A stretch of DNA of 64,000 nt from IMGVR_UViG_3300048672_001051:124001-188000, one strand, 5' to 3'; shown: positions 8,671 to 41,870, counted from the first letter of the stretch. The notes: generated by a model not told the origin, from the sequence alone. Numbers and translations are program-made.

Positions 8671-8765
8671 TGGTGTATGCAGTAGGAATCGAACCTACAC
8701 TGTGATCATTAATCCGGGATCGCGTTTACAGCGCGGTGCAACCAACCAATAGTTGCATTACATAC
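8671..8765 (-). tRNA. tRNA-Tyr(GTA)
   Basis: CT-GTA-AA loop; long variable arm; CCA. Confidence 0.92.
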
Positions 8766-13073: not shown

Positions 13074-13117
13074 GCTTATCCTGCATTTTTTTAACACGTT
13101 ATAAAAACAGTGTATAA

Positions 13118-13206: not shown

Positions 13207-13240
13207 ATAAATTTAAAATATAAATAAAAAGGAAATAAAT

Positions 13241-14642: not shown

Positions 14643-14667
14643 AATATATTTACCTATTTAAAAAGTT

Positions 14668-14741
14668 TGGAGCGGTGTGGCAGATTCGAACTGCCAACTA
14701 TTGGTTGGAAGCCAAGGTGCTGACCGTTACACTACAGTCCC
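14668..14741 (-). pseudogene. tRNA-Gly(TCC) with non-pairing (chimeric) acceptor stem
   Basis: D, anticodon (CT-TCC-AA) and T arms normal; 5' GGGACTG pairs with 3' ACACCGC at only 2 of 7 positions. Confidence 0.75.
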
Positions 14742-14760
14742 CATCACATTACAACAAAAA

Positions 14761-14847
14761 GGCAGAGTGCAGTGGACTCGAACCACAACCGTAAAAACAA
14801 TCACGTTGCTTAGCAGGCAAGTCTTAACCCAGTTAAGTTTACACTCT
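14761..14847 (-). tRNA. tRNA-Ser(GCT)
   Basis: TTGC-CT-GCT-AA-GCAA; long arm; G73. Confidence 0.88.
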
Positions 14848-15007
14848 ATTTAATTGACAATTATATGCTTCTTTTGCCGTTTAGACATGCTGTACATATC
14901 TTTAGCATTAAGAACATCTTTATATGTTGCTTTAAGAGCTTTAGATAATAACTCAGAAAACTCTTTTAAGTCAATAACTTTTTTCATATTTTTAACAATA
15001 ATAAAAA

Positions 15008-15082
15008 TGGTAGTTCTATCAAGACTTGAACTTGAGTCAAACGATTATCAATCGTCCGTTTTACCGACTAAACTACAGAACT
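15008..15082 (-). tRNA. tRNA-Ile(GAT)
   Basis: ACGA-TT-GAT-AA-TCGT; CCA. Confidence 0.92.
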
Positions 15083-15087
15083 AGTAA

Positions 15088-15117
15088 TGGTCTACTGTTG
15101 TATTAAACAGTAGACCA
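15088..15117 (-). terminator. Terminator-like hairpin after vWA gene
   Basis: TGGTCTACTGT-8nt-ACAGTAGACCA. Confidence 0.6.
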
Positions 15118-15124
15118 TAAAGAA

Positions 15125-15979: not shown

Positions 15980-16189
15980 AGATTACTCGTAAAAAATCTG
16001 AAGAATATTCTTCATTAGAAATAAAGGCTGATGTTTGTATCAAACATCACTAGGGAGTTACTGCAACTGAAGGGCAGAGTGGCTGATGATTTAGGAATAA
16101 TTCACTAACATTGTATGTAGTAACTGATACAACAACTGTAATAATCACCCAAAACCATTGACGGCTTGTAAGTACAACCATAATACATC

Positions 16190-16480
16190 CTAAAGTTTAT
16201 TGACAAATCTGGATGATTTTAAGTCAACTGGAGATACATCATTTATCAAATACTGATAGAGTTCGTCAGTAAGTTTGATTGTTCTCAAATAAATTTGAAA
16301 AGCGTAGTCAACATTTTCATGCTTATAATGAAAATAACTAACTTCTAAATCAATACTAACATCATACAGAAAATGATGATCACCACCATGAAAATTCTCT
16401 ACAGCATTTTCAAATGCTTCAATAATTTTTTTAGAAGAACTATCATTAAATAAGTCTTTCATTATAAAACGTTTAATCAT
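16190..16480 (-). CDS. Hypothetical protein
   Basis: 96-aa ORF in operon. Confidence 0.6.
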   Translation of the reverse strand: MIKRFIMKDLFNDSSSKKIIEAFENAVENFHGGDHHFLYDVSIDLEVSYFHYKHENVDYAFQIYLRTIKLTDELYQYLINDVSPVDLKSSRFVNKL

Positions 16481-16488
16481 ATTAAGTC

Positions 16489-16767
16489 TTAATCTTTTTT
16501 CCGAAATTGCCAGCCAGAAGTATGTGCATAATACATAACTGTTTTTAAGTCTGAACTTACATAAACTTTACGGCTACTTTTTAAAGTCTGATAAAAAACT
16601 TTAAAAAGTTCTTGTTGCTTGTTAAGTTCTACAGTAGTCAAAGCGGTTGAGAGTCTGTTAAACAGGGGATGTTGTATAACATTAAGTTGCTTAGCTAGCG
16701 CTAAAGCATCTGATAAACAGCCATTAATTAAAAGAAACTCAATAACAGAATCATTAAGCTTATTCAT
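16489..16767 (-). CDS. Hypothetical protein
   Basis: 92-aa ORF in operon. Confidence 0.6.
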   Translation of the reverse strand: MNKLNDSVIEFLLINGCLSDALALAKQLNVIQHPLFNRLSTALTTVELNKQQELFKVFYQTLKSSRKVYVSSDLKTVMYYAHTSGWQFRKKD

Positions 16768-16787
16768 AATAAAATCTCTCGAATATG

Positions 16788-16900
16788 TGGCAGTAGACCA
16801 AGGACTTGAACCTAAAAGATATTTATTTTAAATATCTCACAGCACCATTTTAAATAACAGTAACTAGTATGTTAAATAAACTTGACCTGTGGGGTCTACC
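16788..16900 (-). ncRNA. Atypical tRNA-like element
   Basis: Acceptor GGTAGAC/GTCTACT, G73, CCA, T-loop TTCAAGT, AT-rich hairpin arm; no recognisable D or anticodon arm. Confidence 0.5.
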
Positions 16901-16906
16901 ATAATT

Positions 16907-17416
16907 TCAGCTTAAAATTTTTAACAAATCTGGAACTGCACTAGTCATACAATAAAACTGATTGACTTGGACTTGTAGAGTTTGACGCATAAAATGCGAA
17001 AAATTATCTAATCCTTTTTGTCGATCGTCAGTAATTAGATGAACTCTTGCAAATTTTAATTGATTAACAACATCAAAAACAATATTTGCTGGAAAAATAA
17101 ATTCTTTTACATTAAAAGGATCTAATGTAAAGGAATAAGTTCTTAAATTAATGTTAATATTTAATTTATTAACAGTAATAAATTCAAACCAGACTAAAAT
17201 CTCCGGTGTTAGAACAACTTTATCATTTATAGTATTTGCTTTAAAAAAAAGACCATTGACAGCTAATACATTATTTAAAAACTCTAATCGCTGTGTAGCA
17301 GAAAATGTGGCTATAAGCCACAAATGAGGCTCAAGATTTCTTTTTTGACTATTTAAAAAACTTAAAAGCGTAGGAAAGCTTGAGCCGTGAAAACTTTCAA
17401 AAAAATGATTATTCAT
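16907..17416 (-). CDS. Hypothetical protein
   Basis: 169-aa ORF. Confidence 0.65.
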   Translation of the reverse strand: MNNHFFESFHGSSFPTLLSFLNSQKRNLEPHLWLIATFSATQRLEFLNNVLAVNGLFFKANTINDKVVLTPEILVWFEFITVNKLNININLRTYSFTLDPFNVKEFIFPANIVFDVVNQLKFARVHLITDDRQKGLDNFSHFMRQTLQVQVNQFYCMTSAVPDLLKILS

Positions 17417-17475
17417 TTTTAAAGCAACCTATAATATGGGAGTACTCTCGAGATTTGGACTAGTTCTAAAAAACT

Positions 17476-18165
17476 TTAATTTATTAAATCTAGCGTGCTT
17501 TTAACAAAATACAAATCTTGCAAAGATTTTTCAATATCTTTTAATTGAGCTTCATGTCTAAGACGTGGTGAAATACATTCTAAAATATTATTAAAGTATT
17601 CAGAGTCAGACAAACAACGACTATAAAAATCAATGTAAACTTGAGTAATAAGTTTACTTAGTTTTAATAGATTCTTTTCTGTATTATCATTGATTTTAAA
17701 AACTCTAGAGTAATTTTCTGAAATACACATTGTTGGAAAATATTTTAAATCAGTAACTAAGTTTTCATACCAAAAATCATAATTAAAAATATTTTCAGGT
17801 GTTAAAAATACTATAGAGTTAATTTTTTCATCTGTTTCTTTTAAAGCTTTTTCCCACTGCTCTTCTTCAGTTAATTTTAAAAAATTATTTATACGTTTTC
17901 TAGATTTGTAATTTTCTTCAAGTCTATTTTCTATATAAACATTTTCATAATATTGAAGGCACCTTTCTGGTGTTTGTACATCTTTATAGTACTCTGTAAA
18001 AGGAATGTGCCTGTAAAATTGAACAGACTCTACTGGATTACCTTCTACAAAATCAACTCCATTCCCTATAGTAAATAAAAAATGGCTTAATACATCAATC
18101 GGTTTTGAAAAACCTGCTGTATATTTAATTTGAGTTTCAGTTACATATTGAATTAAATAACTCAT
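17476..18165 (-). CDS. Hypothetical protein
   Basis: 229-aa ORF. Confidence 0.7.
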   Translation of the reverse strand: MSYLIQYVTETQIKYTAGFSKPIDVLSHFLFTIGNGVDFVEGNPVESVQFYRHIPFTEYYKDVQTPERCLQYYENVYIENRLEENYKSRKRINNFLKLTEEEQWEKALKETDEKINSIVFLTPENIFNYDFWYENLVTDLKYFPTMCISENYSRVFKINDNTEKNLLKLSKLITQVYIDFYSRCLSDSEYFNNILECISPRLRHEAQLKDIEKSLQDLYFVKSTLDLIN

Positions 18166-18186
18166 TTTTAAATTAACCTGGAATAT

Positions 18187-18244
18187 TGGTCGGCGCAGTC
18201 GGAATCGAACCGACGGTGTACCATTACGATGTACGCGATTCGAA
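18187..18244 (-). pseudogene. 3' half (33-76) of a class II-bodied tRNA with TCG (Arg) anticodon
   Basis: T-TCG-AA-TCGC, long arm, GTCGG-TTCGATT-CCGAC, TGCGCCG-A-CCA. Confidence 0.8.
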
Positions 18245-18253
18245 CTAAGAATT

Positions 18254-18280
18254 TGGTATCACGAACGGGATTCGAAACTG
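18254..18280 (-). pseudogene. Degenerate tRNA 3' end fragment
   Basis: TTCGAAT T-loop plus acceptor strand and ACCA. Confidence 0.55.
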
Positions 18281-18288
18281 TACTATAT

Positions 18289-18339
18289 TGGTGTGGGTAG
18301 GGAGAGTCGAACTCCCAAGGCCGAAACCTGTCAGATTTT
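18289..18339 (-). pseudogene. 3' half (35-76) of a tRNA-Leu-like gene
   Basis: AA-AA-TCTGA, AGGT-TTCG-GCCT arm, T arm, TACCCAC-A-CCA. Confidence 0.75.
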
Positions 18340-18378
18340 CTTACCACTATAGTGTAGGTTTTGGTATACAGTATAAAC

Positions 18379-18407
18379 TTGTAATTTATGTGTATAGCTG
18401 TTATAAT
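18379..18407 (+). promoter_or_regulatory. Sigma70-type promoter reading antisense through tRNA-Leu into the endonuclease gene
   Basis: TTGTAA-N17-TATAAT with extended -10 TGn. Confidence 0.65.
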
Positions 18408-18411
18408 ATAT

Positions 18412-18497
18412 TGGTGGGCGCGACAGGACTTGAACCTGCATGCTTTAAAGCGGGACTGTTTAAGAATCCTGAGTCTACCTGATTTCTCCACACGCCC
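18412..18497 (-). tRNA. tRNA-Leu(TAA)
   Basis: GGATT-CT-TAA-AC-AGTCC; long arm; CCA. Confidence 0.9.
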
Positions 18498-18526
18498 AAT
18501 AAATTAAAACTAATAAAGGATTAAAA

Positions 18527-19285
18527 ATGAATCAATTATCAAAAGAACAATTATATAGTTTATATATAAATTATTATCAAACAAATATAAGTAAATTAAA
18601 AACTGCTAAAGAAACTAAAATAGATCGCAGTACAGTAAGAAAATACTTTAATTTATTTCAAACTTCTAATATTGAAGATATTATAAATACAACACACTCA
18701 GAACTTGCTTCATTAAAAGACTATATAAATAGCTGGTCAGTAGTTGAAAAACGTTGTTATACTTATATTTTAGCACAATATTTTGGGGATGGCTATATAA
18801 ATAAAACAGCCAGAACTTGGAAATTAAGGATTTCCAATGATAAAAAATATGAAAATATAAACTGTCTTATAGAAGATTGTCTTACTACTTTATTTCCAAA
18901 CAATTGTGTATCAAGGATTAATAAAACAGGGTGTTGGGATATTTGCGTTCACAGTAAAAAACTCCCTATTTTATTTCCTCACTTAGGGCAGGGTAAAAAA
19001 CATGAAAGAAAAATAAGTTTAACAACAGAACAATTAGAACTATTAAAAATGTATCCTAAGGATTTTATCTTAGGTTGTTTACATTCCGATGGTGCTAAGT
19101 GTAAAAGAAAAACAACAAATCACTTTTATCAATTTACTAATTTATCTTTAGATATAAAAGAATTTTTTGAAATTGCTTGTAGTTGTATAGGCATACCACT
19201 TAAAAATATTAAAGCTAAAAATGTTTATATTTATAAAAGAGAATATATAAATATTATAGATTCATTTTATATTGATAAATCTTAA
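18527..19285 (+). CDS. Freestanding LAGLIDADG-type homing endonuclease with N-terminal HTH
   Basis: YILAQYFGDGYI and FILGCLHSDG motifs. Confidence 0.8.
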   Translation: MNQLSKEQLYSLYINYYQTNISKLKTAKETKIDRSTVRKYFNLFQTSNIEDIINTTHSELASLKDYINSWSVVEKRCYTYILAQYFGDGYINKTARTWKLRISNDKKYENINCLIEDCLTTLFPNNCVSRINKTGCWDICVHSKKLPILFPHLGQGKKHERKISLTTEQLELLKMYPKDFILGCLHSDGAKCKRKTTNHFYQFTNLSLDIKEFFEIACSCIGIPLKNIKAKNVYIYKREYINIIDSFYIDKS

Positions 19286-19293
19286 TTTTAACA

Positions 19294-19313
19294 ACCTGCT
19301 TCGCCATGCGCCG
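19294..19313 (-). pseudogene. 5' fragment of the split Arg(TCG) tRNA
   Basis: CGGCGCA-TG-GCGAAGCAGGT; pairs 7/7 with acceptor strand TGCGCCG at 18191-18197. Confidence 0.8.
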
Positions 19314-19624
19314 ATATGTTTCTAACAACAATATAAAATCTTCTGGCTATATTTTCGTATACAGCATATCTGTTTTGTTAAAAGATCCGGACCTTTCAGA
19401 TGTTTTTACTCTTAAACTACAGAAGATAAACTACTTATTACAAAATTTTTGCAGTGCAAACTGCTTTGTAATCCGTATAAAAACGTGTATTAAATAACTT
19501 AGTTTGTACTTGTTTCGCTTCTAAGCAAGCTTTAGGCGTTGAATACTCTTGAGAGCCGCTAGAAACACTGTCAGTGCTACTTACAAGAACCCAAGTTAAA
19601 ATCCAAATATTCATACAAAAGTCC

Positions 19625-19840
19625 TTAAATAATAAATTCGACAGTACTTGGTGCTGTCACCATGTAATAAGTTTCTTTAAAAAGTTTTAAAGAAACACTT
19701 ACGTTTTTAAACGGAATTTTATCACGAAAAGCATTAATCAAATTTGGTAAAGATTCTGCAAGAGCTAGTTTAATATCAACTAATCCAGACTCTTTTTCTT
19801 TATCCAATAACTTTAAAAGTTCTTGTTTAAAGTTAATCAT
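19625..19840 (-). CDS. Hypothetical protein (start moved to MINFKQ)
   Basis: 71 aa after trimming overlap with upstream gene. Confidence 0.5.
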   Translation of the reverse strand: MINFKQELLKLLDKEKESGLVDIKLALAESLPNLINAFRDKIPFKNVSVSLKLFKETYYMVTAPSTVEFII

Positions 19841-20054
19841 ATGTAATCGTCCGTTGTTTAAAAGTTGCACTACTAGTAGTGCTATTTTCGCAACGTGCAA
19901 TGTAAAGTCTTTCGGCATTAACCCACAATTTTGTTAATGCGCAGTCTTCAAAACCTGAACGTAAATTTAATTCACGCTCAGCTTCTTCTATAGACGTACA
20001 GCCTTGTAAAAAAGCTAAAAACACTGCAGCAATAATAAAACTTTTAATTTTCAT
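19833..20054 (-). CDS. Small lipoprotein
   Basis: Signal peptide with lipobox LQGC. Confidence 0.7.
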   Translation of the reverse strand: MKIKSFIIAAVFLAFLQGCTSIEEAERELNLRSGFEDCALTKLWVNAERLYIARCENSTTSSATFKQRTITYD

Positions 20055-20180
20055 AAGTAATCCTAGTTATAAAGTCATGCTTACTGAACAGCTTCAGCAG
20101 CTTTAAACATTTTATCAATAATAATTTCAAGCTCATCGAGTAAAAGATGAGCTTGTTTAATAAGTTCTGGCATAAATACC

Positions 20181-20717
20181 TCAACAATATTGTGAGTGGT
20201 TATTTGGTGCAATACAAAAATTGTTAGTCAACAGTTTAAAACAACCTTGAGGTACAATTTTTGAAAGCTTGATATACTCATTGGCATTTAAAAGTTCACG
20301 CACAAGTGTGCCTGAAATGTTTAAATCTGATGTAAAATCACAAAAAGTAACTTTTGGATTTAACTCTAAAATTTGATTTAAATATGTAGTAGTACTTAAG
20401 TCTTTCTTAGAACCCGCTAAATGACTGATATCAAAAAGATCAATGAGTTTTGAAACAGACTGTAGCCAGCTGTTGGTGTCTAAGTCATCGTATAACGGTA
20501 TAAATAAGAATTTATCTGCGTCATCAGATGAAAAAGAATTTTTAATACAGTTGACTCTAAAATTAAAATCAAATGGATTTAAATCGTCTACAATACCTAC
20601 GCCTATAGCGACAACAACATTGTTCAAAGTTTTATTCAAAGCTTGTTGAAGTTGCTGAAAATGTCCATTATGGAAACCTTGAAAACGCCCAACAATTAGA
20701 AAATTTGAGTTAATCAT
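20181..20717 (-). CDS. NMN adenylyltransferase (NadM-like, HxGH nucleotidyltransferase)
   Basis: GRFQGFHNGH and ISGTLVRE motifs. Confidence 0.8.
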   Translation of the reverse strand: MINSNFLIVGRFQGFHNGHFQQLQQALNKTLNNVVVAIGVGIVDDLNPFDFNFRVNCIKNSFSSDDADKFLFIPLYDDLDTNSWLQSVSKLIDLFDISHLAGSKKDLSTTTYLNQILELNPKVTFCDFTSDLNISGTLVRELLNANEYIKLSKIVPQGCFKLLTNNFCIAPNNHSQYC

Positions 20718-21195
20718 TTTGACAACCTTGAAGCTTTTTAATTAAATTATCAGCAACTTCAGCAGTAAAACCATAACTATTATCAATTTTTAGAAACTTA
20801 GTTTCATGTTGATAACTTGCATCAGAATCGTCGTCTAAGACGTAGTAATCTTCACAAGTGTTATTGGCTAACCAGTCGGAGATTTGCAAGCCACGGGCAA
20901 TTAAGCCCGCGCGCTTACGGTGTTCTTCAGGTACTAAATCTTTGCAAGTTGTTGAACCAACAACTTCTGCTGTTAAACCCATTGATTTACAAACTATCTG
21001 TAAAGTTTGAAAGTCATATAGTTTGCGCCAACTACTGCTGACAACTATTTTAAAATTACAAACATCAGTTAAGCGATTAATATTTGCAATTAATATTGGA
21101 GAATAAGAATCAATATCATTAGATTGTAATGTTACTAAGTCTGTCGACTCACAAGCATTTATAACACCATCAAAATCAAGAAAAAGAATTTTCAT
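20710..21195 (-). CDS. HAD-family phosphatase (RNA-repair type)
   Basis: FLDFDGV, VVSSSWR, VLDDD; start trimmed to exclude tRNA-Trp. Confidence 0.85.
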   Translation of the reverse strand: MKILFLDFDGVINACESTDLVTLQSNDIDSYSPILIANINRLTDVCNFKIVVSSSWRKLYDFQTLQIVCKSMGLTAEVVGSTTCKDLVPEEHRKRAGLIARGLQISDWLANNTCEDYYVLDDDSDASYQHETKFLKIDNSYGFTAEVADNLIKKLQGCQND

Positions 21196-21209
21196 GTCTA
21201 AACTCAAAA

Positions 21210-21284
21210 TGGCAGCTATGCACGGACTCGAACCGCAACTAATGGTTTTGGAGACCATTGTCCTGCCAATTAGACGACATAGCT
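21210..21284 (-). tRNA. tRNA-Trp(CCA)
   Basis: ATGGT-CT-CCA-AA-ACCAT; CCA. Confidence 0.93.
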
Positions 21285-21291
21285 ACAACAA

Positions 21292-23829
21292 TTAACGATA
21301 CATTTTTGTTAAATATTTTGTTAACAAAAACTGTGCGTGTAAATCAGAACGCTCTTCTGCGTACTCAATTTCTAACTCAGTTGAAAGCTCTTGTAAACGT
21401 TTATCAATTTTAAGTAATAAAGAGTCAAGGCTAAAAGTCATTTCATTTAAACCTACCACTTTTAAACCTGCCAAAGTTTTTAAACGTGATATGGCAACAT
21501 AACCCTGACCTTTTTCAAAAACTTTTGATAAATCTATCTCAGCTTCGTCTAAACTCATACCTTGACAGTTTGACATTACAAAGCCATTTTGAATAAAATT
21601 TCCAGCATTTGGAACCTCAACACATTGCGATTCAAGTTCAATATTGACTAAATTTTCAATTCGAACGTAATAAAAATCTAACAAGTCAGAACAAATTGAA
21701 GGTACATAATCTCTAGTGACGTAACCTCTTTTTAAACTAGCTTTATACATTGTATAAGATATGTATTTATTCGTATACCAATTTAAAAGAGTTTCCTTAG
21801 TTACTGGAACTCTACTATTAGAATCAGTTCTGATAATAGTGTAATTTAAAAGTCTTTGTTGATTAAATTTATTTATAAATCCGACATAATCTCTAAAAAG
21901 CTTGCAGTACTTACCATAAATATATAAATAAGTAATGTTATCTTTTTTTGATATTGTACAAGCAATCCCTACACGTAATAAGACTTGCTGTACAAATTGA
22001 CAAACAGTAAAAGATTTATTAGCAAATTCAATGTGATCTACTTTACTTTGTTTAATATTTACAGTGCCGTCTTCATAAAGACCTTTTAAAAAAGATAACT
22101 GAACAGAAAGGGGTGATTGTTTTATAATATGAGGAACTTGTTTTAAATTTGAAACTAATTCAGGACACCACTCATTCAGTATATAATGAGAAAGATGACG
22201 AGAACAGACTTCAAATTGATAAAAATCTTTACCACCCACATTTAAAATTCTAATAGGGTTATCAACGACATTAAATAAATTAATACATAATTGTTTAAAA
22301 CGTTCTACTGTTTCAATATGTTTTTTAGTTAAGCTAAAAGAACTTTTTCTAACAGTTCCGTCAGCTAAAAGCAATCCTAAGAATTCTGAGAAATTTTCAT
22401 CAAGTACTTCTGGTAATTTGTATTTTACAGTGCGTACATCAAATATTTTTGAAGTCGCAGATGACAATTTTAAATAAGGACTATTACATGTTTGATTAAG
22501 TTTCAGTTTAAGCCATTGACCTACAATAAGCTCTTTAGCTTCTACATAATTCCAAGAATCTCCAGTAAAAGCTAAGCACTTGTGAGAATCAGTGACCTTA
22601 ATACTATAGTTACGCTCACAAATAATTTCTTTTCCAGTTAGTAAGTGGTTATTAACTTTATTAACATAAGGCAACACTTCAAACTCAGTTTGTATTGCGC
22701 CTGACTCTTGTATATCTTTAATCTGCAATAAGCCTTGAGTAGTATTAACATAAGTGTCAGGATGAATACACTTATGGACTGTTATAGCGTAAGCAAGCGT
22801 TAAAGGCACTTGAGTATAAGTAGCGGTGTTACCAGCGCCATTGTTTTCAAAACGCCATTCAACAGGGTCGGCAGTCACTGTTAATCCTGTTGTTAATTTA
22901 ACTTTAGGATAATATTGACCATTAAATCTTTCAAAACCTACGACTGTACCTTGAGACCCATTAGCGTACTGTCCATTTATGTTGTCATTTTTAACAAACA
23001 TAACTTTAGTGTTAAGTTTTAATTCAAGAACTTCAGGAGCTTTAATATTTGCTTTTAACATATCTACAAATATAGATTTACCTGTAGTTTTAGCCTTATT
23101 AGTATACACAATACCTGGCAGGGCATCAAAATGTTGTTTATTAATAGCTGTAACGTCTCTGTTGTGAGTATACAACTTTAAAGGATTTGTGAGCGTATTT
23201 GAAGAAGTCGCAGCAATAATATCAATGTGCTCTTGAGTGACAGTTTGAGATCTTATTGCATTTAAAATATCATTTAACTTATCACCATCAGCTTGACGAT
23301 ATTGTTTTGTTAAGTAGCAAGACTTAAAATTTGCTCTAACCCAAACAGGTGACATAAAGCAAAATTTATCGCGATTGGCTTCACCATTAGTACTAACTGG
23401 TGGTAATTGTAGCCCATCACCAGCTAATATAACTTGAAGACCGCCAAATGGTTTTTCACTCTGCCGTAGCCTACGTAGTACAAAATCAATTGCTTCAAAC
23501 TGATCTTTGTGCAACATAGATATTTCATCAATAACTAAAACGCGAGCTTTAATTATCTTCATGTATTTTATTTGATTTTTCTTAATCTTGTCGACATGTG
23601 TTTGTGTAATGTGGCTTTTAATTCCAATGCCAGTCCAAGAGTGAATTGTCTGACCATCAATATTTGTAGCTGCAATACCTGTAGACGCAGTAATAGCGTA
23701 AGGCACGTTACGAGCTTTAAGATAGTCTAAATACACTTTTAAAGTATAAGATTTACCAACACCTGCAGAGCCAGTTAAAAATACATTGGCACCTGTTTTA
23801 AGAATATTTAAAGCAGTTGTTTGATCCAT
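21292..23829 (-). CDS. Pif1-family SF1B helicase precursor containing an intein
   Basis: GSAGVGKS, IDEISM, GDGLQLPP, AITVHK|CQG, YVAISR. Confidence 0.92.
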   Translation of the reverse strand: MDQTTALNILKTGANVFLTGSAGVGKSYTLKVYLDYLKARNVPYAITASTGIAATNIDGQTIHSWTGIGIKSHITQTHVDKIKKNQIKYMKIIKARVLVIDEISMLHKDQFEAIDFVLRRLRQSEKPFGGLQVILAGDGLQLPPVSTNGEANRDKFCFMSPVWVRANFKSCYLTKQYRQADGDKLNDILNAIRSQTVTQEHIDIIAATSSNTLTNPLKLYTHNRDVTAINKQHFDALPGIVYTNKAKTTGKSIFVDMLKANIKAPEVLELKLNTKVMFVKNDNINGQYANGSQGTVVGFERFNGQYYPKVKLTTGLTVTADPVEWRFENNGAGNTATYTQVPLTLAYAITVHKCIHPDTYVNTTQGLLQIKDIQESGAIQTEFEVLPYVNKVNNHLLTGKEIICERNYSIKVTDSHKCLAFTGDSWNYVEAKELIVGQWLKLKLNQTCNSPYLKLSSATSKIFDVRTVKYKLPEVLDENFSEFLGLLLADGTVRKSSFSLTKKHIETVERFKQLCINLFNVVDNPIRILNVGGKDFYQFEVCSRHLSHYILNEWCPELVSNLKQVPHIIKQSPLSVQLSFLKGLYEDGTVNIKQSKVDHIEFANKSFTVCQFVQQVLLRVGIACTISKKDNITYLYIYGKYCKLFRDYVGFINKFNQQRLLNYTIIRTDSNSRVPVTKETLLNWYTNKYISYTMYKASLKRGYVTRDYVPSICSDLLDFYYVRIENLVNIELESQCVEVPNAGNFIQNGFVMSNCQGMSLDEAEIDLSKVFEKGQGYVAISRLKTLAGLKVVGLNEMTFSLDSLLLKIDKRLQELSTELEIEYAEERSDLHAQFLLTKYLTKMYR
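21568..22770 (-). mobile_element. 401-aa intein with LAGLIDADG endonuclease
   Basis: Starts CIHPDT after TVHK, ends FVMSN before Cys+1; FLGLLLADG and FLKGLYEDG motifs. Confidence 0.92.
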
Positions 23830-23885
23830 AGCAGTGTTTCATTTTTAATAATTGTATATTTAATGTGTTTTATAAAATTTGTGAG

Positions 23886-23961
23886 TGGTCCACCTGGAGG
23901 GATTCGAACCCCCAATCTAGAGAATAGAAGTCTCTTGCTTTATCCATTTAGCCACAGGCGG
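23886..23961 (-). tRNA. tRNA-Arg(TCT)
   Basis: AGAGA-CT-TCT-AT-TCTCT; CCA. Confidence 0.93.
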
Positions 23962-32289: not shown

Positions 32290-32640
32290 CTAGTATTACA
32301 CCTCCATTTTTTGTGTTAATTATTATAACACAAAAATTAAAAATGTAAATTTAAAAATGGACTATATCTTCACTCCTAAATAAGGAGGCTTCCTGTTTCG
32401 GGTGATAAAACCCTACTCTACTCGCTTCTTCGGGTAGTTAACCCTATGCTTTCGATAGTCTCTGAACTCTCATCTGTATTTATTATACAGATGCTCAGCT
32501 GCGGATTAATTCATCAATAAACTTTTTACTATACCTAGGTCATTACGCTAGCCCTTATCTATATCACTATGATAAGTTAGTATTTATTGATTAAGAACAG
32601 TCCCCGCAATTAAGGAAGTTTTACTTGGGCCATTTTGTTA
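31273..32640 (-). mobile_element. Group I intron, 1368 nt
   Basis: P AATTGCGGGGA 32601-32611, Q AATCCGCAGC 32498-32507, R GTTCAGAGACTAT 32455-32467, S AAGATATAGTCC 32359-32370; P1 TTGGGT/GCCCAA with U.G at splice site; terminal G. Confidence 0.93.
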
Positions 32641-34096
32641 ACCCAACGCCAAATACAATATTGGTGCTAGCAAAGCCTTTCGCTTCAAGCCGTTTGAAAA
32701 TTTCAGTAGCACGTTCAAATGTAATGCCATCGCCATAAATCATACCGATATGACTATCTAGTACTTTATAGCCAAGCTCGTTAACCGTGCCGCCGAATAA
32801 ATCCCAAAGAGCTTCAATTGTGCCTTTGTACTCAACATCAATTTCTTTTTCAACAAAAGACATTACTGCAGTTTTATGATTGAGCTGATAATAATTTGGA
32901 GCTGCACGAACCCACGTTAATTCATTAGCAGTCACAACCCACAGCTTATCATCCCATTTAAAAGACATTGTGTAAGTAGTCACACCTTCTTTATTAGTTG
33001 GTGTGGTAGCTTCGACTTTGTTTGCAATACGCATTTTACAAACACTTAAAAATTCATCAAAAGTCTCAGCAGACTCTTTTGAAATTTCAATGTATTGCAA
33101 ATTTGTACCTGTAATGATATCGACAGGATTGCCGGAATCACCACGAATAACAAATTTGCCATCACGCGACATAATTTTGTCTTTGTGAATTGGTAAAATG
33201 TTTTCAATAACATTCCAATAGTCATAACTGTCAGCTACATAGCTGACAATACCCGTTTTGAATTGATTCAATACGTAGTCAATATACTTGACTTCACCAT
33301 CGTACTTATCATCAGGGTTAGACATTGTAATACCTAAAGTGGTAACACTATGCTCACCAGCTGGGACTGAATAGGCAATAGGTTGTTTTGAAATATCAGC
33401 ATTATAGTACTGTTCTAAGTACATGATTGCAGGCATATTATCTGAGCCCAAAGAGCTTAGAAGAAAACCTGCACCATTTGCTGCTGAACTTTCAAAACCA
33501 CTTTGACCGCGGAATGAAAAATCATGCAATTGAAAATCTACACCATCTGTTGAACCAGTGGTTTTGATTGCTGCCGCATTAGCTAAAATACGGAACAATC
33601 GGCCAACAGTTGCAACTGTCATTGGCTTCCAAATCTGAGCACTCAAGATAGTCTCAAGATAATTTGGAAGCCACTGAAAATCTGGATGAGTATTTTTTAT
33701 AGTAAACAGTGGAATGTTTGGTTGTACTAAGGAACCTTCAGGCAAGCCTTTGATTTCAATAGGTAAATAGCCCAAATCATGCAACTGTTCAAAATGCGAG
33801 TAATCACTCATACCGATGTATGGCGTGAGTACACGTTTCATCTCAGCGATAACTTCATCTTTTGGCTGATTAAAAAATGTGTCATTCCACATATTGTGAA
33901 AAATTTCTTTGATAGCTGCTTGCAAACCAAAGAAAACAATTTGATCATCAAACAACGGATAAAGTTGTTTCAAATAATGCGTAAATCGAGCAGTAAAGTT
34001 CGAATAAATCTGCTGTGTACCTGGAGTGGTAAACTGAATATGACTCAATTTGTATGAGTCTGTTAGTAGTGCTGCAAAAGCTGGAGTTAACTTCAT
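32641..34096 (-). CDS. nadV: NAMPT-like protein (NadV or Namat), exon 1; spliced product 581 aa
   Basis: LTDSYKLSH, YLET, LHDFSFRG, PAGEHS, VADSYD, RGDSGNP, IYGDGIT. Confidence 0.92.
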
Positions 34097-34105
34097 AAAA
34101 ATCTC

Positions 34106-34933
34106 TTAAAAATCATTAGCTGTTTTAACAAACATAGTATTAATCATACCATGCCAATTATAATAAGCATAAACCATGTCAATATCTACAAGCAGAGGTT
34201 CGAGACCTTTACTGAAAATACCATGAGTAATGTATAGTGTAACAGTTTTAGCGCCAGCTTCTTTTAAAGCTTTAGCTAGTTGGATAAAAGTCCAACCACC
34301 GTCGCAGATATCATCTGCAATTAAAACATCCAAACCGTCAACAGGATCAGTTACACGAGTACCTGTGATTGCACCAGTAGTGACATCACGGTCTTTCAAT
34401 GCAACAATTAACTTGTTGACGCCAAGAGCTTTGCTAACATTTAAACACTTTTTATAAGCACCAGCATCTGGACTAATAATAGCGTCAAAAGTTTTTCCAA
34501 AGTCGAATGTTTTAATACACTCATATTGATTTATAACATAAGAGTTATTAATTAAAGCTGGAGCAACATCACTGTGAGGATCAGTTACTATAACTTTAGG
34601 AAGATTGAAGCTATTTAGCAATTCTGCAAATAACTTTAAACTTTGAGCATCACCTTCAACCATTGCACGATCTTGACGTGCAAAAGAGATATATGGCAGA
34701 TATAACACAATATCAGAAGATGTTGATTTGAGGACGCTTAAGACTTGGAGCAATGCAAGAACGCCACTGGAATCTTTTATTTTCGCAGTAACATTAAAGC
34801 TATCACAAGTGTTAGCAGCCCCTAGAGTGACTTGTACTTCTCCAGCTGAGAAAGTTTTGCAACTCACCTCAAGTGGGATTGTTGTTTGAAGTCCTTTGAG
34901 ACGACCAACAACGGTAATTAATGATTTCATCAT
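34106..34933 (-). CDS. prs: Ribose-phosphate pyrophosphokinase-like protein (PRS or Adps)
   Basis: FSAGEV, PYISFARQDR, DPHSDV, SPDAGA, ADDICDGGWTF, THGIFSKG. Confidence 0.9.
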   Translation of the reverse strand: MMKSLITVVGRLKGLQTTIPLEVSCKTFSAGEVQVTLGAANTCDSFNVTAKIKDSSGVLALLQVLSVLKSTSSDIVLYLPYISFARQDRAMVEGDAQSLKLFAELLNSFNLPKVIVTDPHSDVAPALINNSYVINQYECIKTFDFGKTFDAIISPDAGAYKKCLNVSKALGVNKLIVALKDRDVTTGAITGTRVTDPVDGLDVLIADDICDGGWTFIQLAKALKEAGAKTVTLYITHGIFSKGLEPLLVDIDMVYAYYNWHGMINTMFVKTANDF

Positions 34934-38003: not shown

Positions 38004-38384
38004 TTAAAGTCCTCTGACTTTACAGATTGTTTGTTTGATTTCAATTAAATCATCTTTGATTTGTTCCTGTTCTTCGTGAGTAAAAATATCACGATCAACA
38101 ATAACTTTTGTAATCATATTTGCAATAATGCAAGGAATGATTACAAATATCCAAAAATGACCTAAAAGAATAGTTAAAACTTTACCTAAAACAGTGTGTG
38201 GTGATATATCTCCATAACCAATAGTTAATGAAGTTATGCAAGCCCACCAAAGGCTGTTGAACAACGTCTCATGCTCAACAATTGAGTAAACAACAGTGCT
38301 TAAAACAAGGCTTAGCCCGTATGTAAAAAATAACAGGCTGAGATTGTTTGAAAGCTTTGTAAACAGCTTTATAAATGAGGACAT
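38004..38384 (-). CDS. Pore-only two-TM potassium channel
   Basis: SLWWACITSLTIGYGDISP selectivity filter flanked by TM helices. Confidence 0.9.
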   Translation of the reverse strand: MSSFIKLFTKLSNNLSLLFFTYGLSLVLSTVVYSIVEHETLFNSLWWACITSLTIGYGDISPHTVLGKVLTILLGHFWIFVIIPCIIANMITKVIVDRDIFTHEEQEQIKDDLIEIKQTICKVRGL

Positions 38385-38824
38385 TTTGGATTGTGATCTT
38401 GAAAATGATCAAACAGTAGTGTAAATACGCGACTGTTATAAGTTTCAAAACGATACGATGGAATATGATTAAGTTTTACAGGCAATTTTAAAAGTTCAAT
38501 TACATCTTTAATGAACAAAACAATTGCAGCAGAACGACTTATACCCATTAAACAATGTACATAAATATTGTCGTAAGGTTTTAAATCACCATTCACATCA
38601 AAAACGAGATCGTAGATTACCTTAGCATGCTTTGTTGTGAAACTAAAGTGATCATCTTCAAAGATTAACTGTGCACTAGCCGCAAATTTGTCACCTAAAT
38701 CAAAACGATTATCAGGTTTGGTGATAACAGAAATTGCAAGAGTTTTAGACAAATCTAAATTACCTTGCATAATTTTTTCACCAAAAACATATTGTGAAAA
38801 AAAGTCAATATTTAAATTTTTCAT
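38369..38824 (-). CDS. Protein-tyrosine/dual-specificity phosphatase-like protein
   Basis: VHCLMGISRS (CX5R). Confidence 0.82.
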   Translation of the reverse strand: MKNLNIDFFSQYVFGEKIMQGNLDLSKTLAISVITKPDNRFDLGDKFAASAQLIFEDDHFSFTTKHAKVIYDLVFDVNGDLKPYDNIYVHCLMGISRSAAIVLFIKDVIELLKLPVKLNHIPSYRFETYNSRVFTLLFDHFQDHNPKCPHL

Positions 38825-38826
38825 CG

Positions 38827-39273
38827 TTAAGGCTCCAACCGTAGCTGCTCTTTTAAAAAAGAATAGTTAGGATATTTTTCAAATTGAATACAATGCCAAA
38901 CATTAGGCGTATCGGAATATTGCAGGATATTAGTAATAGTTCCAACACGCCCATGATACATTGAACCTGGATAATAAATTTTCACGTTATCATTAATTTT
39001 AAAAGACCGTGGTTGAGACGATGCAATTAAAATTTTTAAGAAATCTTCAGAGACTACTCGACAAGGCGGACTTCCAACTATTAAAGAAACAGTATTTTCA
39101 AAAATATCTAAACATTCAGTATTAGATATTTTTTTGAAAATACTGTAGCTACAAATTTCAAGTACACCATCAACTAAACGTTGTTTAGGTTGAATATAGT
39201 GCTGACCTTTCTTAACAAATAAGCTGAGAGGGTTTGTTAGAGTACTCATAAGAAGACCTTTAGAATAAATCAA
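38827..39273 (-). CDS. Hypothetical protein
   Basis: 148 aa; C-terminal KOW/SH3-like GRVGTITNI. Confidence 0.6.
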
Positions 39274-40481
39274 GCAAAGATTTTAATCCGTGCAATATTT
39301 TTCTTACCAAGTTGAACTACAACAGTTTGACCAGCTGTAAAAACAACAGTTGGTGTAGCAATAACACCATCAACTTTTACAGCACTATTTTTTAAAGCGT
39401 CCTTAGCCATTGCAGAGTTTTTAGCTAATTTAGCTCGTAGTAGTACACTACCAATAAACAACTGCTCCTGTCCTTCTAAAGATAGGCTGACTTCAGGCAT
39501 GTCCTCTGGTAGCTCACCATCCATGATGCGGTTGCCTGAGCTCTTGTGAGCATTGGCGGCGGCATCGGCGTCGTGGAAGCGTTCGATCAACTCTAATGCC
39601 AAGATGCGCTTGATCTCTTGCGGGTTACGGCCTGCTTGCATTTCGGCAAGTAGCGATTCGACTTCGCTCATGCTGCGGAAACTGAGCAGCTCGAAGTAAC
39701 GGGCGATCAGTGTGTCTGGCATGGAGAGGATTTTTTGATACATGCTGCCTGCGCTGTCGTGCACACCAATATAGTTGCCCAGTGACTTTGACATTTTTTG
39801 TACGCCGTCAAGTCCTTCTAGGATTGGGACGGTGATACAGACTTGTGGGGTTTGGTCGTAGCGCGATTGCAGGGTGCGACCCATCAATAGGTTAAAGGTT
39901 TGATCGGTTCCACCAAGTTCGACGTCAGCCTTGAGTGCAACAGAATCATAGCCTTGTACTAATGGGTACAAAAACTCGTGAATTGCAATCGGTTGTTGGT
40001 CGTTAAAGCGCTTACTAAAGTCATTACGTTCCATCATGCGGGAGACGGTTTGCTGACTGGCTAGACGAATCAGGTCGGCGGCGGACATGGCATCAAACCA
40101 TGTGCTGTTAAACACGACTTCGGTTTTGGCGGGATCCAGAATTTTAAACACTTGTTCTTGGTAGCTCTTGGCATTTTCGGCCACTTGTTCGCGAGTCAGT
40201 GGTGGGCGGGTAGCGCTTTTGCCTGTGGGATCGCCAATCATGCCGGTGTAGTCGCCAATCAAGAAGAGGACGTGGTGGCCAAGTTCTTGGAAGGTGCGTA
40301 GTTTGTTGATCAATACGGTATGACCCAAATGCAGGTCTGGTGCGGTGGGATCGAATCCGGCTTTGATGCGCAGCGGGCGATTTTCTTGCAGTTTTTTGAG
40401 CAGGTCTTCGCGCGAGATGATTTCGCTGGTGCCGCGTTCGATCAGGGCCAGTTGTTGCTCGGCTGGGAGAAAGGAGGTCAT
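39270..40481 (-). CDS. tyrS: Tyrosine--tRNA ligase, GC-mosaic, Moraxellaceae-like
   Basis: [34 protein letters not shown]; C-terminal S4 domain. Confidence 0.97.
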
Positions 40482-40669
40482 GTTAATATGCTCAAGATGA
40501 CAGAAGCAATAGCAACTGTTTCAGAAGAATGAGCAATTAAAAAATAAGTTAAGATAATCATGTGTCATCATCACAAGTAAAAGATTTAAAAAAGAATAAA
40601 GCTATAAAAATAGCTAGAGGATATTTTAGAAGTTTCATTTTGAATAGCCTTTGAGTCGTGGTATAACTT

Positions 40670-40960
40670 TTAATGGAAGTGTTGGTATAAAACAATCCCG
40701 ATACAATGAGTTAAAATAAGACAAATAAAATTAATTAAAAAATAATTTTTAAAAGTCTTTTGAGCATAGTATTCTCTATTAAAAATTAAAAAGAATACTA
40801 AAGCTTGTGCAAAACAGCTAAGTAAAATACCTACGTAAGTCAATTCTGGTGGTGGCGCAACAAATGCTAACCAACCAGAAATTGCAATAACATAGATAAT
40901 AACTCTGCCAAAAAGCATAATATTATTAAAAAAATTTGAAGGTTGTGCTGAAGAATTCAT
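40670..40960 (-). CDS. Small three-TM membrane protein
   Basis: Hydrophobic segments. Confidence 0.65.
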   Translation of the reverse strand: MNSSAQPSNFFNNIMLFGRVIIYVIAISGWLAFVAPPPELTYVGILLSCFAQALVFFLIFNREYYAQKTFKNYFLINFICLILTHCIGIVLYQHFH

Positions 40961-40962
40961 TT

Positions 40963-41190
40963 TTAAATACTCTCAGAATACTTTAAAAGCCAATGACGAG
41001 TTACTGTACATTGATCAACTGGATAAGCTTTATCACCAATGAAGTAGATGTTTTTAATACGACTTACTTCAAAATTTAATACATACATTTTTTCAGTATT
41101 ACAAACAACTGTCAAAGGCATGATAATTAAATACAAAATAAAGAATATTCCAGCAGTAATCAAAACAAGTTTACTAATACTTTTAAACAT
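40963..41190 (-). CDS. Small membrane-anchored protein
   Basis: N-terminal TM helix. Confidence 0.6.
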   Translation of the reverse strand: MFKSISKLVLITAGIFFILYLIIMPLTVVCNTEKMYVLNFEVSRIKNIYFIGDKAYPVDQCTVTRHWLLKYSESI

Positions 41191-41229
41191 TGCGCTAACC
41201 TTTAGCTAAAAAATTATTAGTTGTAGCGC

Positions 41230-41870
41230 CAGAGTCGGCGTACATTCCGTTTTGTGTTAAAAGAACAGTACTCATATCGGTAACACTTAATCAGGGTAGA
41301 GAGGAAAAGCTTTGTTGTTTCTCAATAATAGTCTATTTTACAAAAGCATTATTGAGAAACAACAACTTTTTAAGGTTGTTGTTTCTACGGCGTTCTTTAG
41401 ATTCTAATTTTAAATAAGGTTGATGTAATTTAGCCTTTCGGCTAACGATAAAGCAGTAATTTAGGCATATTTTATCTCGCAAGGTGGGGGCGGGAACGGC
41501 GGAAAGAACTGGGCTAATGTTACATTACAACAAAGAATTAATAGTTGCAAAACAGACAGACTAGCTAGAAAGTTTTGCAACATGGGTTTTACCGATTAAG
41601 CAGATAAATAAATCAACTGCCTTGTAGAGCCTATAGCAAAATAGGTTTTACGCGCTGTATACACTATATTTTAGTATATTAGTGTATTTCTCAACGCTTA
41701 AAAAATTGCTTTTTGACTAAACAAACGGTACGGTTGTCGCACTTTTTAGTCGCTATAATATTTTAAAAAGTGCGACATTTACTCAGAAAGATGGAATGCC
41801 ACTTTTGGACATTCAATATACACCCCCTGAGCTATGCTATAAGCGTAAGACGCCTTTTACAAGGCGTCCG
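41230..41870 (-). ncRNA. About 640-nt ORF-free, hairpin-rich region (large ncRNA or origin candidate)
   Basis: Perfect inverted repeats of 18, 14 and 10 bp; two GNRA-capped hairpins on the minus strand. Confidence 0.4.

What the first reader, a model, noticed from the sequence alone, without database searches (positions are those of the whole stretch)
39270..40481. TyrRS gene is a compositional mosaic: host-like GC-rich catalytic part fused in frame to an AT-rich C-terminus
Seen: spot counts give 31/60 GC at lines 40081 and 40381 but 23/60 and 21/60 at lines 39301 and 39361. The shift is near 39480-39500, at the start of the S4 domain, with no frame break. The protein closely resembles Acinetobacter-type TyrRS (from memory). 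Inference: recent homologous replacement of most of a resident phage tyrS by a roughly 50% GC Moraxellaceae allele, keeping a phage tRNA-binding S4 domain. This both identifies the host and may retune tRNA specificity.
Basis: partly seen in the sequence, partly recalled or inferred. Interest (0 to 1): 0.6.

Follow-up and report, generated by a model that had tools for sequence, protein, structure and literature searches.

The report
Mosaic host–phage tyrosyl-tRNA synthetase gene
An uncultured freshwater jumbo phage carries a tyrosyl-tRNA synthetase gene whose first 85% was recently copied from a Moraxellaceae bacterium, while its last 60 codons (the tRNA-binding S4-like domain) are an old, phage-adapted version. 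It is a clean example of gene conversion between host and phage, and it points to the phage's host.

Summary
tyrS (window 39270-40481, minus strand, 403 aa) has GC about 0.5 and GC3 0.58 over codons 1-343, and GC3 0.12 over codons 344-403. The phage's median GC3 is 0.235.

- **N-part:** it is 98.3% (aa) and 95.6% (nt) identical to a chromosomal allele of an uncultured Moraxellaceae bacterium of about 49% GC. Runs of 270 and 188 nt are identical, and there is no AT-ward drift.
- **C-part:** it is only about 50% identical to any TyrRS. Synonymous sites are saturated and codon usage is phage-like, yet it is collinear to the stop, open, keeps the family's conserved residues, and is predicted to fold as an S4-like domain.
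- **Junctions:** the breakpoint lies in window 39452-39489 (chi2 308, 0 of 300 permutations). The 5' edge is at the ATG.
- **Interpretation:** A recent host-derived tract overwrote most of an old resident phage tyrS.

Caveats:
- No parental AT-rich allele was found.
- A 60-column tree cannot separate the segments by topology, only by branch length.
- The idea that the retained domain retunes tRNA choice is untested, though the phage tRNA-Tyr has an enlarged variable arm.

The process is known from cyanophage psbA/psbD. I found no earlier phage aaRS example.

The parts
39270..40481 (-). tyrS, an intact 403-aa bacterial-type tyrosyl-tRNA synthetase. HIGH motif = HLGH, residues 51-54. KMSKS = residues 229-233.
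   Evidence: ORF and translation. TIGR00234 scores 376 bits against a cut-off of 113.8, over residues 8-401. PF00579 matches residues 33-315. The AF2 model has pLDDT 84. The best fold matches are full-length Thermus TyrRS-tRNA complexes.
39490..40481 (-). Recently acquired host-derived tract (gene nt 1-992). It covers the Rossmann catalytic domain, the alpha-helical domain, the linker and the first strand of the C-terminal domain. Composition and codon usage are bacterial.
   Evidence: Identity to the P0002 allele over nt 1-1028 is 95.6%: 87.8% for nt 1-90, 93.4% for 91-453 and 98.3% for 454-1028. The two are identical from nt 805 to 992. The codon-usage LLR is -113.5. Of 37 phage-unique sites, 14 go to AT and 18 to GC. 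GC3 of 0.583 is not below the bacterial alleles' 0.54-0.57.
39453..39489 (-). Crossover or transition zone (gene nt 993-1029). It ends in the shared CAGTTGTTTAT (QLFI) motif.
   Evidence: There are 5 differences in 37 nt, after 188 nt with none (Fisher p 9e-5). The maximum chi-square breakpoint falls after nt 1028, with chi2 307.7 and 0 of 300 permutations reaching it.
39270..39452 (-). Old, phage-adapted 3' part (gene nt 1030-1212 including the stop). It encodes most of the S4-like C-terminal tRNA-binding domain.
   Evidence: Identity to the donor alleles is 51% nt and 48% aa, ungapped, with the same stop position. GC3 is 0.117 and the codon LLR is +25.0. pS is 0.83 and dN 0.50. The phage keeps 16 of 21 strongly conserved columns against 15 of 39 variable ones (p 0.007). 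The frame is open where only 0.8% of shuffles are. pLDDT is about 90, with two helices followed by a beta sheet.
40482..40669 (-). AT-rich, phage-type upstream intergenic region. It holds one promoter-like site (40568-40541). Similarity to bacterial loci begins only at the base before the ATG.
   Evidence: Searches show no similarity to the conserved bacterial upstream sequence. One search gives the promoter-like site. GC is 0.22-0.27.
8671..8765 (-). Phage tRNA-Tyr(GUA), 95 nt. It has G1-C72, A73 and a variable arm of about 22 nt. It is a possible cognate substrate of the retained phage-type C-terminal domain (inference only).
   Evidence: ARAGORN. Rfam tRNA scores 34.9 bits against a gathering score of 29. 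The tRNA-Tyr of the donor-like MAG is 84 nt, with a variable arm of about 13 nt.

Best explanation
**What it is.** The gene is a functional-looking chimeric tyrS, made by recombination between a tyrS long resident in this ME3-like jumbo phage lineage and the chromosomal tyrS of a Moraxellaceae bacterium.

**The old copy.** The resident copy was itself captured long ago from a Moraxellaceae-type bacterium. It has since been fully recoded to phage codon usage.

**The new tract.** The bacterial donor is a close relative of an uncultured MAG cluster with about 49% GC, and is presumably the current host. The incoming tract replaced codons 1 to about 331-343. That covers the catalytic Rossmann domain with HIGH and KMSKS, the alpha-helical domain and the linker.

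**The joints.** The 3' crossover lies in a 37-nt zone ending at the conserved CAGTTGTTTAT (QLFI) motif. The 5' edge lies at the start codon, so the phage's own upstream region still drives the gene.

**What was kept.** The last 60 codons, most of the S4-like domain, remain the old phage version. In solved Thermus TyrRS-tRNA complexes this domain holds the long variable arm and anticodon stem of tRNA-Tyr. That role is established knowledge from 1H3E; it was not tested here.

**Shown:** two segments with very different divergence and codon usage, a sharp in-frame collinear breakpoint, the donor lineage, and continued constraint on the old domain.

**Inferred:**
- The old segment is the remnant of a full-length resident gene.
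- The exchange took place during infection.
- The enzyme charges tRNA-Tyr.
- Keeping the phage-type domain may serve the phage's own unusual tRNA-Tyr. It may equally be an accident of where the crossover fell.
For: **Breakpoint and divergence**
- Nucleotide similarity to the MAG allele is 89.8% and ends at gene nt 1028.
- Amino-acid differences from P0002 are 6 of 343 before the breakpoint and 31 of 60 after it (Fisher p 8e-24).
- Maximum chi-square is 307.7, reached by 0 of 300 permutations.
- dS is 0.196 in the N-part and saturated in the C-part.

**Codon usage**
- The LLR is -113.5 for the N-part and +25.0 for the C-part.

**Comparison with bacterial alleles**
- Bacterial allele pairs that are 95-100% identical in the N-part are 68-100% identical in the C-part. 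The phage is 98.3% and 48.3%.

**Recency**
- The N-part shows no amelioration: 14 changes to AT against 18 to GC. GC3 is not lowered.
- Runs of 188 and 270 nt are identical to a bacterial chromosomal allele.

**The C-part is a true TyrRS C-terminus**
- It sits inside the Moraxellaceae-type clade (100* against the beta and other gamma clade), on the longest end branch in the tree, 0.55.
- It aligns without gaps to the same stop.
- Conserved columns are kept preferentially, and the frame is open.
- It is confidently predicted as an S4-like fold.

**Context**
- Both flanks are phage DNA, and the genome holds a single tyrS.
- The bacterial context of the donor alleles is anmK-tyrS.
- The phage is related to Acinetobacter phage ME3, which has no tyrS at the matching position.

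**Against a misassembly**
- The exact mosaic protein is on two contigs with the same neighbours.
- An independent Logan assembly of run X1 holds all 355 sampled 31-mers of window 38301-41700. The chance that none of them spans a given junction is 0.035.
Against: - No full-length AT-rich parental tyrS, and no close relative of the C-part, was found in the viral, metagenome or protein collections.
- The AU test does not reject placing the C-part as sister to the donor clade (p 0.73). Topology alone therefore does not prove two origins.
- The shared sequence at the joints is very short, so ordinary homologous recombination is not demonstrated. A 5' edge exactly at the ATG is not what a crossover inside homologous coding sequence would predict.
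- Read-level continuity and coverage could not be checked.
- The closest full-length donor allele is only 95.6% identical, so the true donor is unsampled.
Confidence: 0.77

Rival explanations
1. The parents are the same but the route differs. A complete host tyrS was captured first, next to or in place of the old copy. Then either a deletion between tandem new and old copies at the conserved QLFI stretch, or a patch from a co-infecting phage carrying the old allele, produced the in-frame chimera.
For: A tandem-copy deletion naturally gives a collinear, in-frame chimera with a joint in a conserved motif. The 5' edge exactly at the ATG fits an illegitimate capture better than a crossover within homology.
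Against: No remnant of a second copy or of host flanking DNA is left. The genome has one tyrS match. No repeats flank the gene. The outcome cannot be told apart from direct gene conversion with the data in hand.
Confidence: 0.15
2. Assembly chimera. The metagenome assembler stitched about 1 kb of a bacterial tyrS into the phage contig.
For: The source is a metagenome in which related bacteria may co-occur. Strain-level chimeras are common in such assemblies.
Against: Two joints would be needed. Both would have to be collinear and in frame, and would require shared k-mers between alleles that are about 50% identical. The phage would still need its own tyrS to supply the 3' part. The exact protein occurs on two contigs. 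Logan's separate assembly of run X1 holds 100% of the sampled 31-mers, and the chance that none spans a junction is 0.035.
Confidence: 0.04
3. The whole gene was captured once, recently, and the last 60 codons then diverged in place. Possible causes are local hypermutation or selection tied to the downstream gene's signals.
For: The AU test cannot exclude the C-part branching with the donor clade.
Against: This would need saturation of synonymous sites (pS 0.83) and 50% amino-acid change in 180 nt. Meanwhile the adjacent 188 nt carry no change at all, and the N-part shows no AT drift. The boundary is sharp to within 37 nt. No DGR-like or repeat features were seen.
Confidence: 0.02
4. A truncated host tyrS was fused to an unrelated phage ORF that happens to encode an S4-type RNA-binding domain.
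For: Pfam S4 (PF01479) does not reach threshold on the phage C-part, so it is atypical.
Against: The C-part aligns without gaps to the TyrRS C-termini, down to the same stop. It gives E = 9e-11 to full-length TyrRS in the search restricted to residues 336-403. It lies inside the Moraxellaceae-type TyrRS clade. TIGR00234 covers residues 8-401.
Confidence: 0.02

Closest known systems
Intragenic host-phage recombination in cyanophage psbA/psbD (Zeidner et al., as cited in Sullivan et al. 2006, PMC1484495)
   Same: A host-derived auxiliary gene carried by a phage shows patchy %G+C and statistically supported intragenic exchange with host alleles. Exchange is proposed in both directions.
   Different: Here the gene is an aminoacyl-tRNA synthetase in a jumbo phage of Moraxellaceae. 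The two parts differ far more: one has saturated dS and the other has identical runs. The boundary lies about 14 residues inside a functional domain, so the enzyme is a near domain-level chimera.
TyrRS genes of jumbo phages (Cronobacter GAP32, Pectobacterium CBB, Erwinia/Serratia Eneladusvirus-like phages, Xanthomonas XbC2)
   Same: These are large phages with tRNA banks that carry their own tyrS.
   Different: Those proteins are only 26-29% identical to this one. I found no report of a host-allele mosaic among them. This gene belongs to the Moraxellaceae chromosomal subfamily.
Chromosomal TyrRS of Moraxellaceae (A. baumannii structure 6bqy; uncultured MAG alleles P0002-P0007)
   Same: They share the family, the 403-aa length, the motifs and the fold. 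The N-part is 97-98% identical to the MAG alleles.
   Different: The last 60 residues are about 48% identical and are encoded with phage codons. The gene sits in phage DNA, without the bacterial anmK neighbour or upstream region.
Acinetobacter phage vB_AbaM_ME3 (Metrivirus; PMC5000817)
   Same: Genome size is similar (234.9 against 229.7 kb) and AT content is high. It shares the Kef-like small ORF and core proteins at 31-47% aa identity.
   Different: ME3 has no tyrS at the matching position or anywhere else. Nucleotide similarity is negligible, so this is a distant relative and not the same genus.

Membership tests
Bacterial-type tyrosyl-tRNA synthetase (TIGR00234, class I) | Full-length match to the equivalog model above its curated cut-off | tested here: met
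   376.3 bits against a cut-off of 113.8, over residues 8-401.
Bacterial-type tyrosyl-tRNA synthetase (TIGR00234, class I) | Class I signature motifs HIGH and KMSKS | tested here: met
   HLGH at residues 51-54 and KMSKS at 229-233 in the translation. Both are invariant in the family alignment.
Bacterial-type tyrosyl-tRNA synthetase (TIGR00234, class I) | C-terminal S4-like tRNA-binding domain | tested here: met
   The AF2 model of residues 331-403 has pLDDT about 90, with two helices and a beta sheet. Foldseek aligns the full length to Thermus TyrRS-tRNA 1h3e. Pfam PF01479 itself does not reach E 0.01 on this copy.
Bacterial-type tyrosyl-tRNA synthetase (TIGR00234, class I) | Tyrosylation of tRNA-Tyr | not testable with these tools
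   This needs an aminoacylation assay.
Host-phage intragenic recombinant auxiliary gene (psbA/psbD type) | Compositional patchiness inside one intact ORF | tested here: met
   GC3 is 0.583 against 0.117, with GC1 and GC2 flat.
Host-phage intragenic recombinant auxiliary gene (psbA/psbD type) | Statistically supported breakpoint against an identified host allele | tested here: met
   Maximum chi-square is 307.7, reached by 0 of 300 permutations. The donor allele is 95.6-98.3% identical.
Host-phage intragenic recombinant auxiliary gene (psbA/psbD type) | Discordant phylogeny of the segments | tested here: inconclusive
   The N-part is nested in the donor clade with an end branch of 0. The C-part has an end branch of 0.55, but the AU test does not reject the same clade (p 0.73). 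The discordance is in depth, not in resolved topology.
Host-phage intragenic recombinant auxiliary gene (psbA/psbD type) | Second parent (a phage-resident allele) observed | tested here: not met
   No relative of the C-part was found in the viral, metagenome or protein collections. Its existence is inferred from codon usage.
ME3-like (Metrivirus-related) jumbo phages of Acinetobacter | Shared core genes and genome architecture | tested here: inconclusive
   Only ME3 and PBAB25 match two large core proteins, at 31-47% aa identity. One 115-nt DNA match exists. Local synteny around the Kef-like ORF is partial. No whole-genome comparison was made.

The most novel reading that the evidence does not exclude
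The phage tyrS is in ongoing, two-way exchange with host chromosomal tyrS.

**Evidence for exchange.** The bacterial P0002 allele is a P0003-type gene. It matches P0003 in the 600 nt upstream, in nt 1-453 and from nt 993 on. It also carries a patch of about 515 nt (nt 474-987) that matches the phage copy at 46 of 52 informative sites. That patch ends exactly where the phage sequence stops being bacterial-like.

**What it would mean.** If the patch came from the phage, the phage shuttles synthetase alleles between Moraxellaceae strains. In the same reading, the old S4-like domain is kept through repeated conversions because it is co-adapted to the phage's own tRNA-Tyr with its enlarged variable arm. 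The result would be a partly private synthetase-tRNA pair.
Probability: 0.15. Interest if true: 0.7.

Novelty: new member of a known kind. Interest (0 to 1): 0.48.

Why it matters
- **Host link.** It ties an uncultured 230-kb freshwater jumbo phage to a specific uncultured Moraxellaceae lineage. The tie reaches about 95-98% nucleotide identity, with identical runs of 188-270 nt. That is much tighter than composition or tRNA matching allows.
- **Turnover of translation genes.** It shows that translation genes in large phages are not only captured once and left to ameliorate. Host alleles can overwrite them, much as happens with cyanophage photosystem genes.
- **A natural experiment.** The result is a near domain swap in a synthetase: a host catalytic and anticodon-recognition body joined to a long-diverged phage tRNA-arm-binding domain. 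It sits next to a phage tRNA-Tyr with an unusual variable arm. This makes co-adaptation of the TyrRS C-terminal domain and the tRNA variable arm directly testable.

Tried and rejected
- **Reads.** There is no read-level test. Scans were kept to 40720 or below.
- **Relatives of the flanking ORFs and the Kef-like ORF in viral contigs:** none.
- **Relatives of the C-part:** none in viral contigs or metagenome contigs. The protein search restricted to residues 336-403 gave at best 55% identity, all to ordinary TyrRS.
- **A nearer donor:** a fragment search with residues 1-180 found nothing above 87%. An exact 37-mer from the 5' end had no match in JGI metagenomes.
- **Other phage tyrS hits.** L082 (IMG/VR) and "Acinetobacter phage MD-2021a" are host-composition bacterial-type genes. 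L082 is 88% nt identical to Psychrobacter, and a TraA relaxase sits on another MD-2021a contig. They are not a phage tyrS lineage.
- **Mobile-element signs.** No flanking direct or inverted repeats of note.
- **GC-rich contig ends.** They have no DNA match in the donor-like MAG genome, no PHROG or Pfam identity for the largest ORFs, and no phage match for the 1211-aa ORF.
- **5' patchwork idea, rejected.** I asked whether the first 90 nt are a mix with the old allele. Of the 11 phage-unique sites there, 7 go towards G or C.

Full report
**Setting.** The window is bases 124001-188000 of a 229,656-bp viral contig that CheckV rates 98% complete. The contig has 34.8% GC and a bank of 15 tRNA genes. 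It also carries NAD-salvage genes and many orphan ORFs. Its only relatives among sequenced phages are Acinetobacter phages. The window shares a 115-nt DNA match and a Kef-like small ORF with the jumbo phage vB_AbaM_ME3. Two large core proteins match only ME3, at 31-47% amino-acid identity, and PBAB25. ME3 has no tyrS at the matching position or elsewhere.

**The observation.** The ORF at 39270-40481 on the minus strand encodes an unbroken 403-aa protein. It is a full-length tyrosyl-tRNA synthetase: TIGR00234 scores 376 bits against a cut-off of 113.8, over residues 8-401, and PF00579 covers residues 33-315. The HIGH (HLGH) and KMSKS motifs are present.

In 150-nt windows GC is 0.45-0.56 from the start codon down to about 39450. 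It is about 0.3 in the last 180 nt and on both flanks. The step is carried by third codon positions alone. GC3 is 0.583 for codons 1-343 and 0.117 for codons 344-403, while GC1 and GC2 do not move. Among 214 phage ORFs the median GC3 is 0.235 and the maximum is 0.554.

**Two histories in one gene.** The nearest genome allele is in a Moraxellaceae MAG (L002). It is 89.8% identical at the nucleotide level over gene nt 1-1028, and there the alignment stops. Upstream, similarity starts at the base before the ATG.

A closer allele, P0002, lies on at least four ENA metagenome assemblies in the bacterial context anmK-tyrS at about 49% GC. It is 95.6% identical over nt 1-1028, with 39 synonymous and 6 non-synonymous codon differences. 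Over nt 1029-1209 it is only 51% identical.

At the protein level the phage is 98.3% identical to P0002 over residues 1-343 and 48.3% over residues 344-403 (Fisher p 8e-24). The alignment has no gaps and the stop position is the same. A maximum chi-square scan puts the breakpoint after nt 1028, with chi2 307.7 and 0 of 300 permutations reaching it.

| Measure | N-part (codons 1-343) | C-part (codons 344-403) |
|---|---|---|
| dS or pS against P0002 | dS 0.196 | pS 0.83 (saturated) |
| dN against P0002 | 0.008 | 0.50 |
| Codon-usage LLR (phage over bacterium) | -113.5 | +25.0 |
| GC3 | 0.583 | 0.117 |

Among 4,560 bacterial allele pairs, those 95-100% identical in the N-part are 68-100% identical in the C-part. 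The phage-donor pair falls far outside that range.

**How recent is the N-part?** There are 37 sites where the phage differs from all seven sampled bacterial alleles. They show no drift towards A or T: 14 go to AT and 18 to GC. The phage's GC3 is not lower than the bacterial alleles' 0.54-0.57. The tract has therefore not begun to ameliorate in a genome whose equilibrium GC3 is about 0.23.

Identity to P0002 is uneven: 87.8% for nt 1-90, 93.4% for nt 91-453 and 98.3% for nt 454-1028. There are no differences at all from nt 805 to 992.

A three-way comparison explains this. The bacterial P0002 allele is a P0003-type gene. The two are 100% identical in the 600 nt upstream and in nt 1029-1209. 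P0002 carries a patch of about 515 nt (nt 474-987) that agrees with the phage at 46 of 52 informative sites (Fisher p 5e-13). Either an unsampled sister lineage gave DNA to both the phage and the P0002 strain, or the phage and that strain exchanged DNA directly. In both cases, tracts identical to the phage copy sit in a bacterial chromosome today.

**The junctions.** After 188 identical bases there is a 37-nt zone with five differences (nt 993-1029, window 39453-39489). It ends in the shared CAGTTGTTTAT that encodes the conserved QLFI. From nt 1030 similarity is at the level of distant homologues (p 9e-5). The P0002 patch ends at nt 987-993, the same place.

In the AlphaFold model the flexible linker is at residues 318-329 and the C-terminal domain begins with a strand at 330-334. 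The joint therefore lies about 14 residues inside that domain, at the start of its first helix.

The 5' edge is at the start codon. The 188-nt upstream region is AT-rich, holds one promoter-like site, and bears no resemblance to the conserved bacterial upstream sequence. No repeats or mobile-element signs flank the gene.

**What is the C-part?** It is a real TyrRS C-terminus, not a foreign S4 protein.
- In a tree of the 60 columns it falls inside the Moraxellaceae-type clade, with support 100 against the betaproteobacterial and other gammaproteobacterial clade. It has the longest end branch of all 97 rows, 0.55.
- Its exact place is unresolved. An AU test does not reject it as sister to the donor clade (p 0.73). 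The two segments therefore differ in depth, not in demonstrable topology.
- It is still under constraint. It keeps 16 of 21 columns that are at least 80% conserved in 96 bacterial sequences, against 15 of 39 variable columns (p 0.007). The frame is open where only 0.8% of shuffles are.
- The model gives pLDDT of about 90 there, with two helices and a beta sheet. The best fold matches are full-length Thermus TyrRS-tRNA complexes.
- No close relative exists in the viral contigs, the JGI metagenome contigs or the 5.8-billion-protein collection. The other "phage" hits of this subfamily are bacterial-type genes.

**Best explanation.** An old tyrS, captured long ago from a Moraxellaceae-type bacterium and fully recoded in the phage lineage, had its first 331-343 codons overwritten recently by the chromosomal allele of a current Moraxellaceae host. 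The old S4-like domain was left in place.

The route is inferred and cannot be settled here. It could be direct gene conversion at microhomologies, or capture of a whole gene followed by a deletion between the new and old copies.

Function is also inferred. The domain that was kept is the one that contacts the long variable arm of tRNA-Tyr in solved Thermus complexes. That is established knowledge from 1H3E, which is also the top fold match. Tyrosine identity elements are reviewed in PMC9976931.

The phage encodes its own tRNA-Tyr. It has the bacterial identity elements G1-C72, A73 and GUA, but its variable arm is about 22 nt, against about 13 nt in the donor-like MAG. This is compatible with co-adaptation and does not prove it. 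A neutral crossover position explains the data equally well.

**Is it an assembly artefact?** I could not lay reads. Four points argue against a chimera:
- Two collinear in-frame joints would be needed between alleles that are about 50% identical locally.
- The phage would still need its own tyrS to supply the 3' part.
- The exact protein is recorded on two contigs with the same neighbours.
- Logan's separate assembly of run X1 holds all 355 sampled 31-mers of window 38301-41700. The chance that none spans a given junction is 0.035.

I put this rival at about 4%.

**Comparison with what is known.** Patchy %G+C and intragenic exchange between host and phage copies are established for cyanophage psbA and psbD (PMC1484495). 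Jumbo phages are known to carry tyrS and tRNA banks, but those TyrRS are only 26-29% identical to this one. My literature searches turned up no earlier host-allele mosaic of a phage aaRS. That is an absence of hits in the held library, not proof of absence.

I therefore class this as a new member of a known kind. The process is ordinary, the example is unusually clean, and the domain-level outcome is testable.

Noticed in passing
Outside the window: genome 1-3800 and 212,951-227,950 (loci L090:1-4000, L089:2900-18000): Both ends of the contig are GC-rich, up to 0.61, with ORF GC3 of about 0.5 against a phage median of 0.235. They hold large orphan ORFs of 1211, 728 and 703 aa, a 634-aa ORF with YadA-head repeats and a peptidase PHROG, and a PF10118 hydrolase. 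The 1211-aa ORF gives only weak Atlas leads (0.87-0.88), to viral orphan clusters and the RdRP-like family PF05183. No DNA match in the donor-like MAG. This may be one continuous block if the genome is circularly permuted, and possibly another recently acquired module.
   Followed up: partly
L084:4000-5212 against L121:1500-2712 (bacterial loci): The bacterial P0002 tyrS allele is itself recombinant. It has a P0003-type backbone plus a patch at nt 474-987 that matches the phage copy at 46 of 52 informative sites. The patch ends where the phage's junction zone begins. The direction of exchange is unknown.
   Followed up: partly
window 7161-23961: A bank of 15 tRNA genes, all on the minus strand. 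Several have unusual lengths for their type: Tyr 95 nt, Gln 89 nt, Met 89 nt. The Tyr gene scores only 34.9 bits on the Rfam tRNA model.
   Followed up: partly
window 21292-23829 (-): An 845-aa helicase-like ORF matches the ME3 helicase in two pieces that cover only about 51% of its length. This suggests an inserted element, such as an intein or a nuclease domain, or a fusion.
   Followed up: no
window 32621-34933 (-): An NAD-salvage pair: nicotinamide phosphoribosyltransferase (491 aa) and ribose-phosphate pyrophosphokinase (275 aa). The matching ME3 region carries a nicotinamide-nucleotide adenylyltransferase-like gene.
   Followed up: no
window 38004-38824 (-): A small Kef-like ORF (Ion_trans_2, 126 aa) shared with ME3 gp314. 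Next to it is a 151-aa ORF with a sub-threshold dual-specificity phosphatase match.
   Followed up: no
Nothing can be concluded about them. They lie in the 96-aa orphan ORF upstream of tyrS and were left out of all later searches.
   Followed up: no
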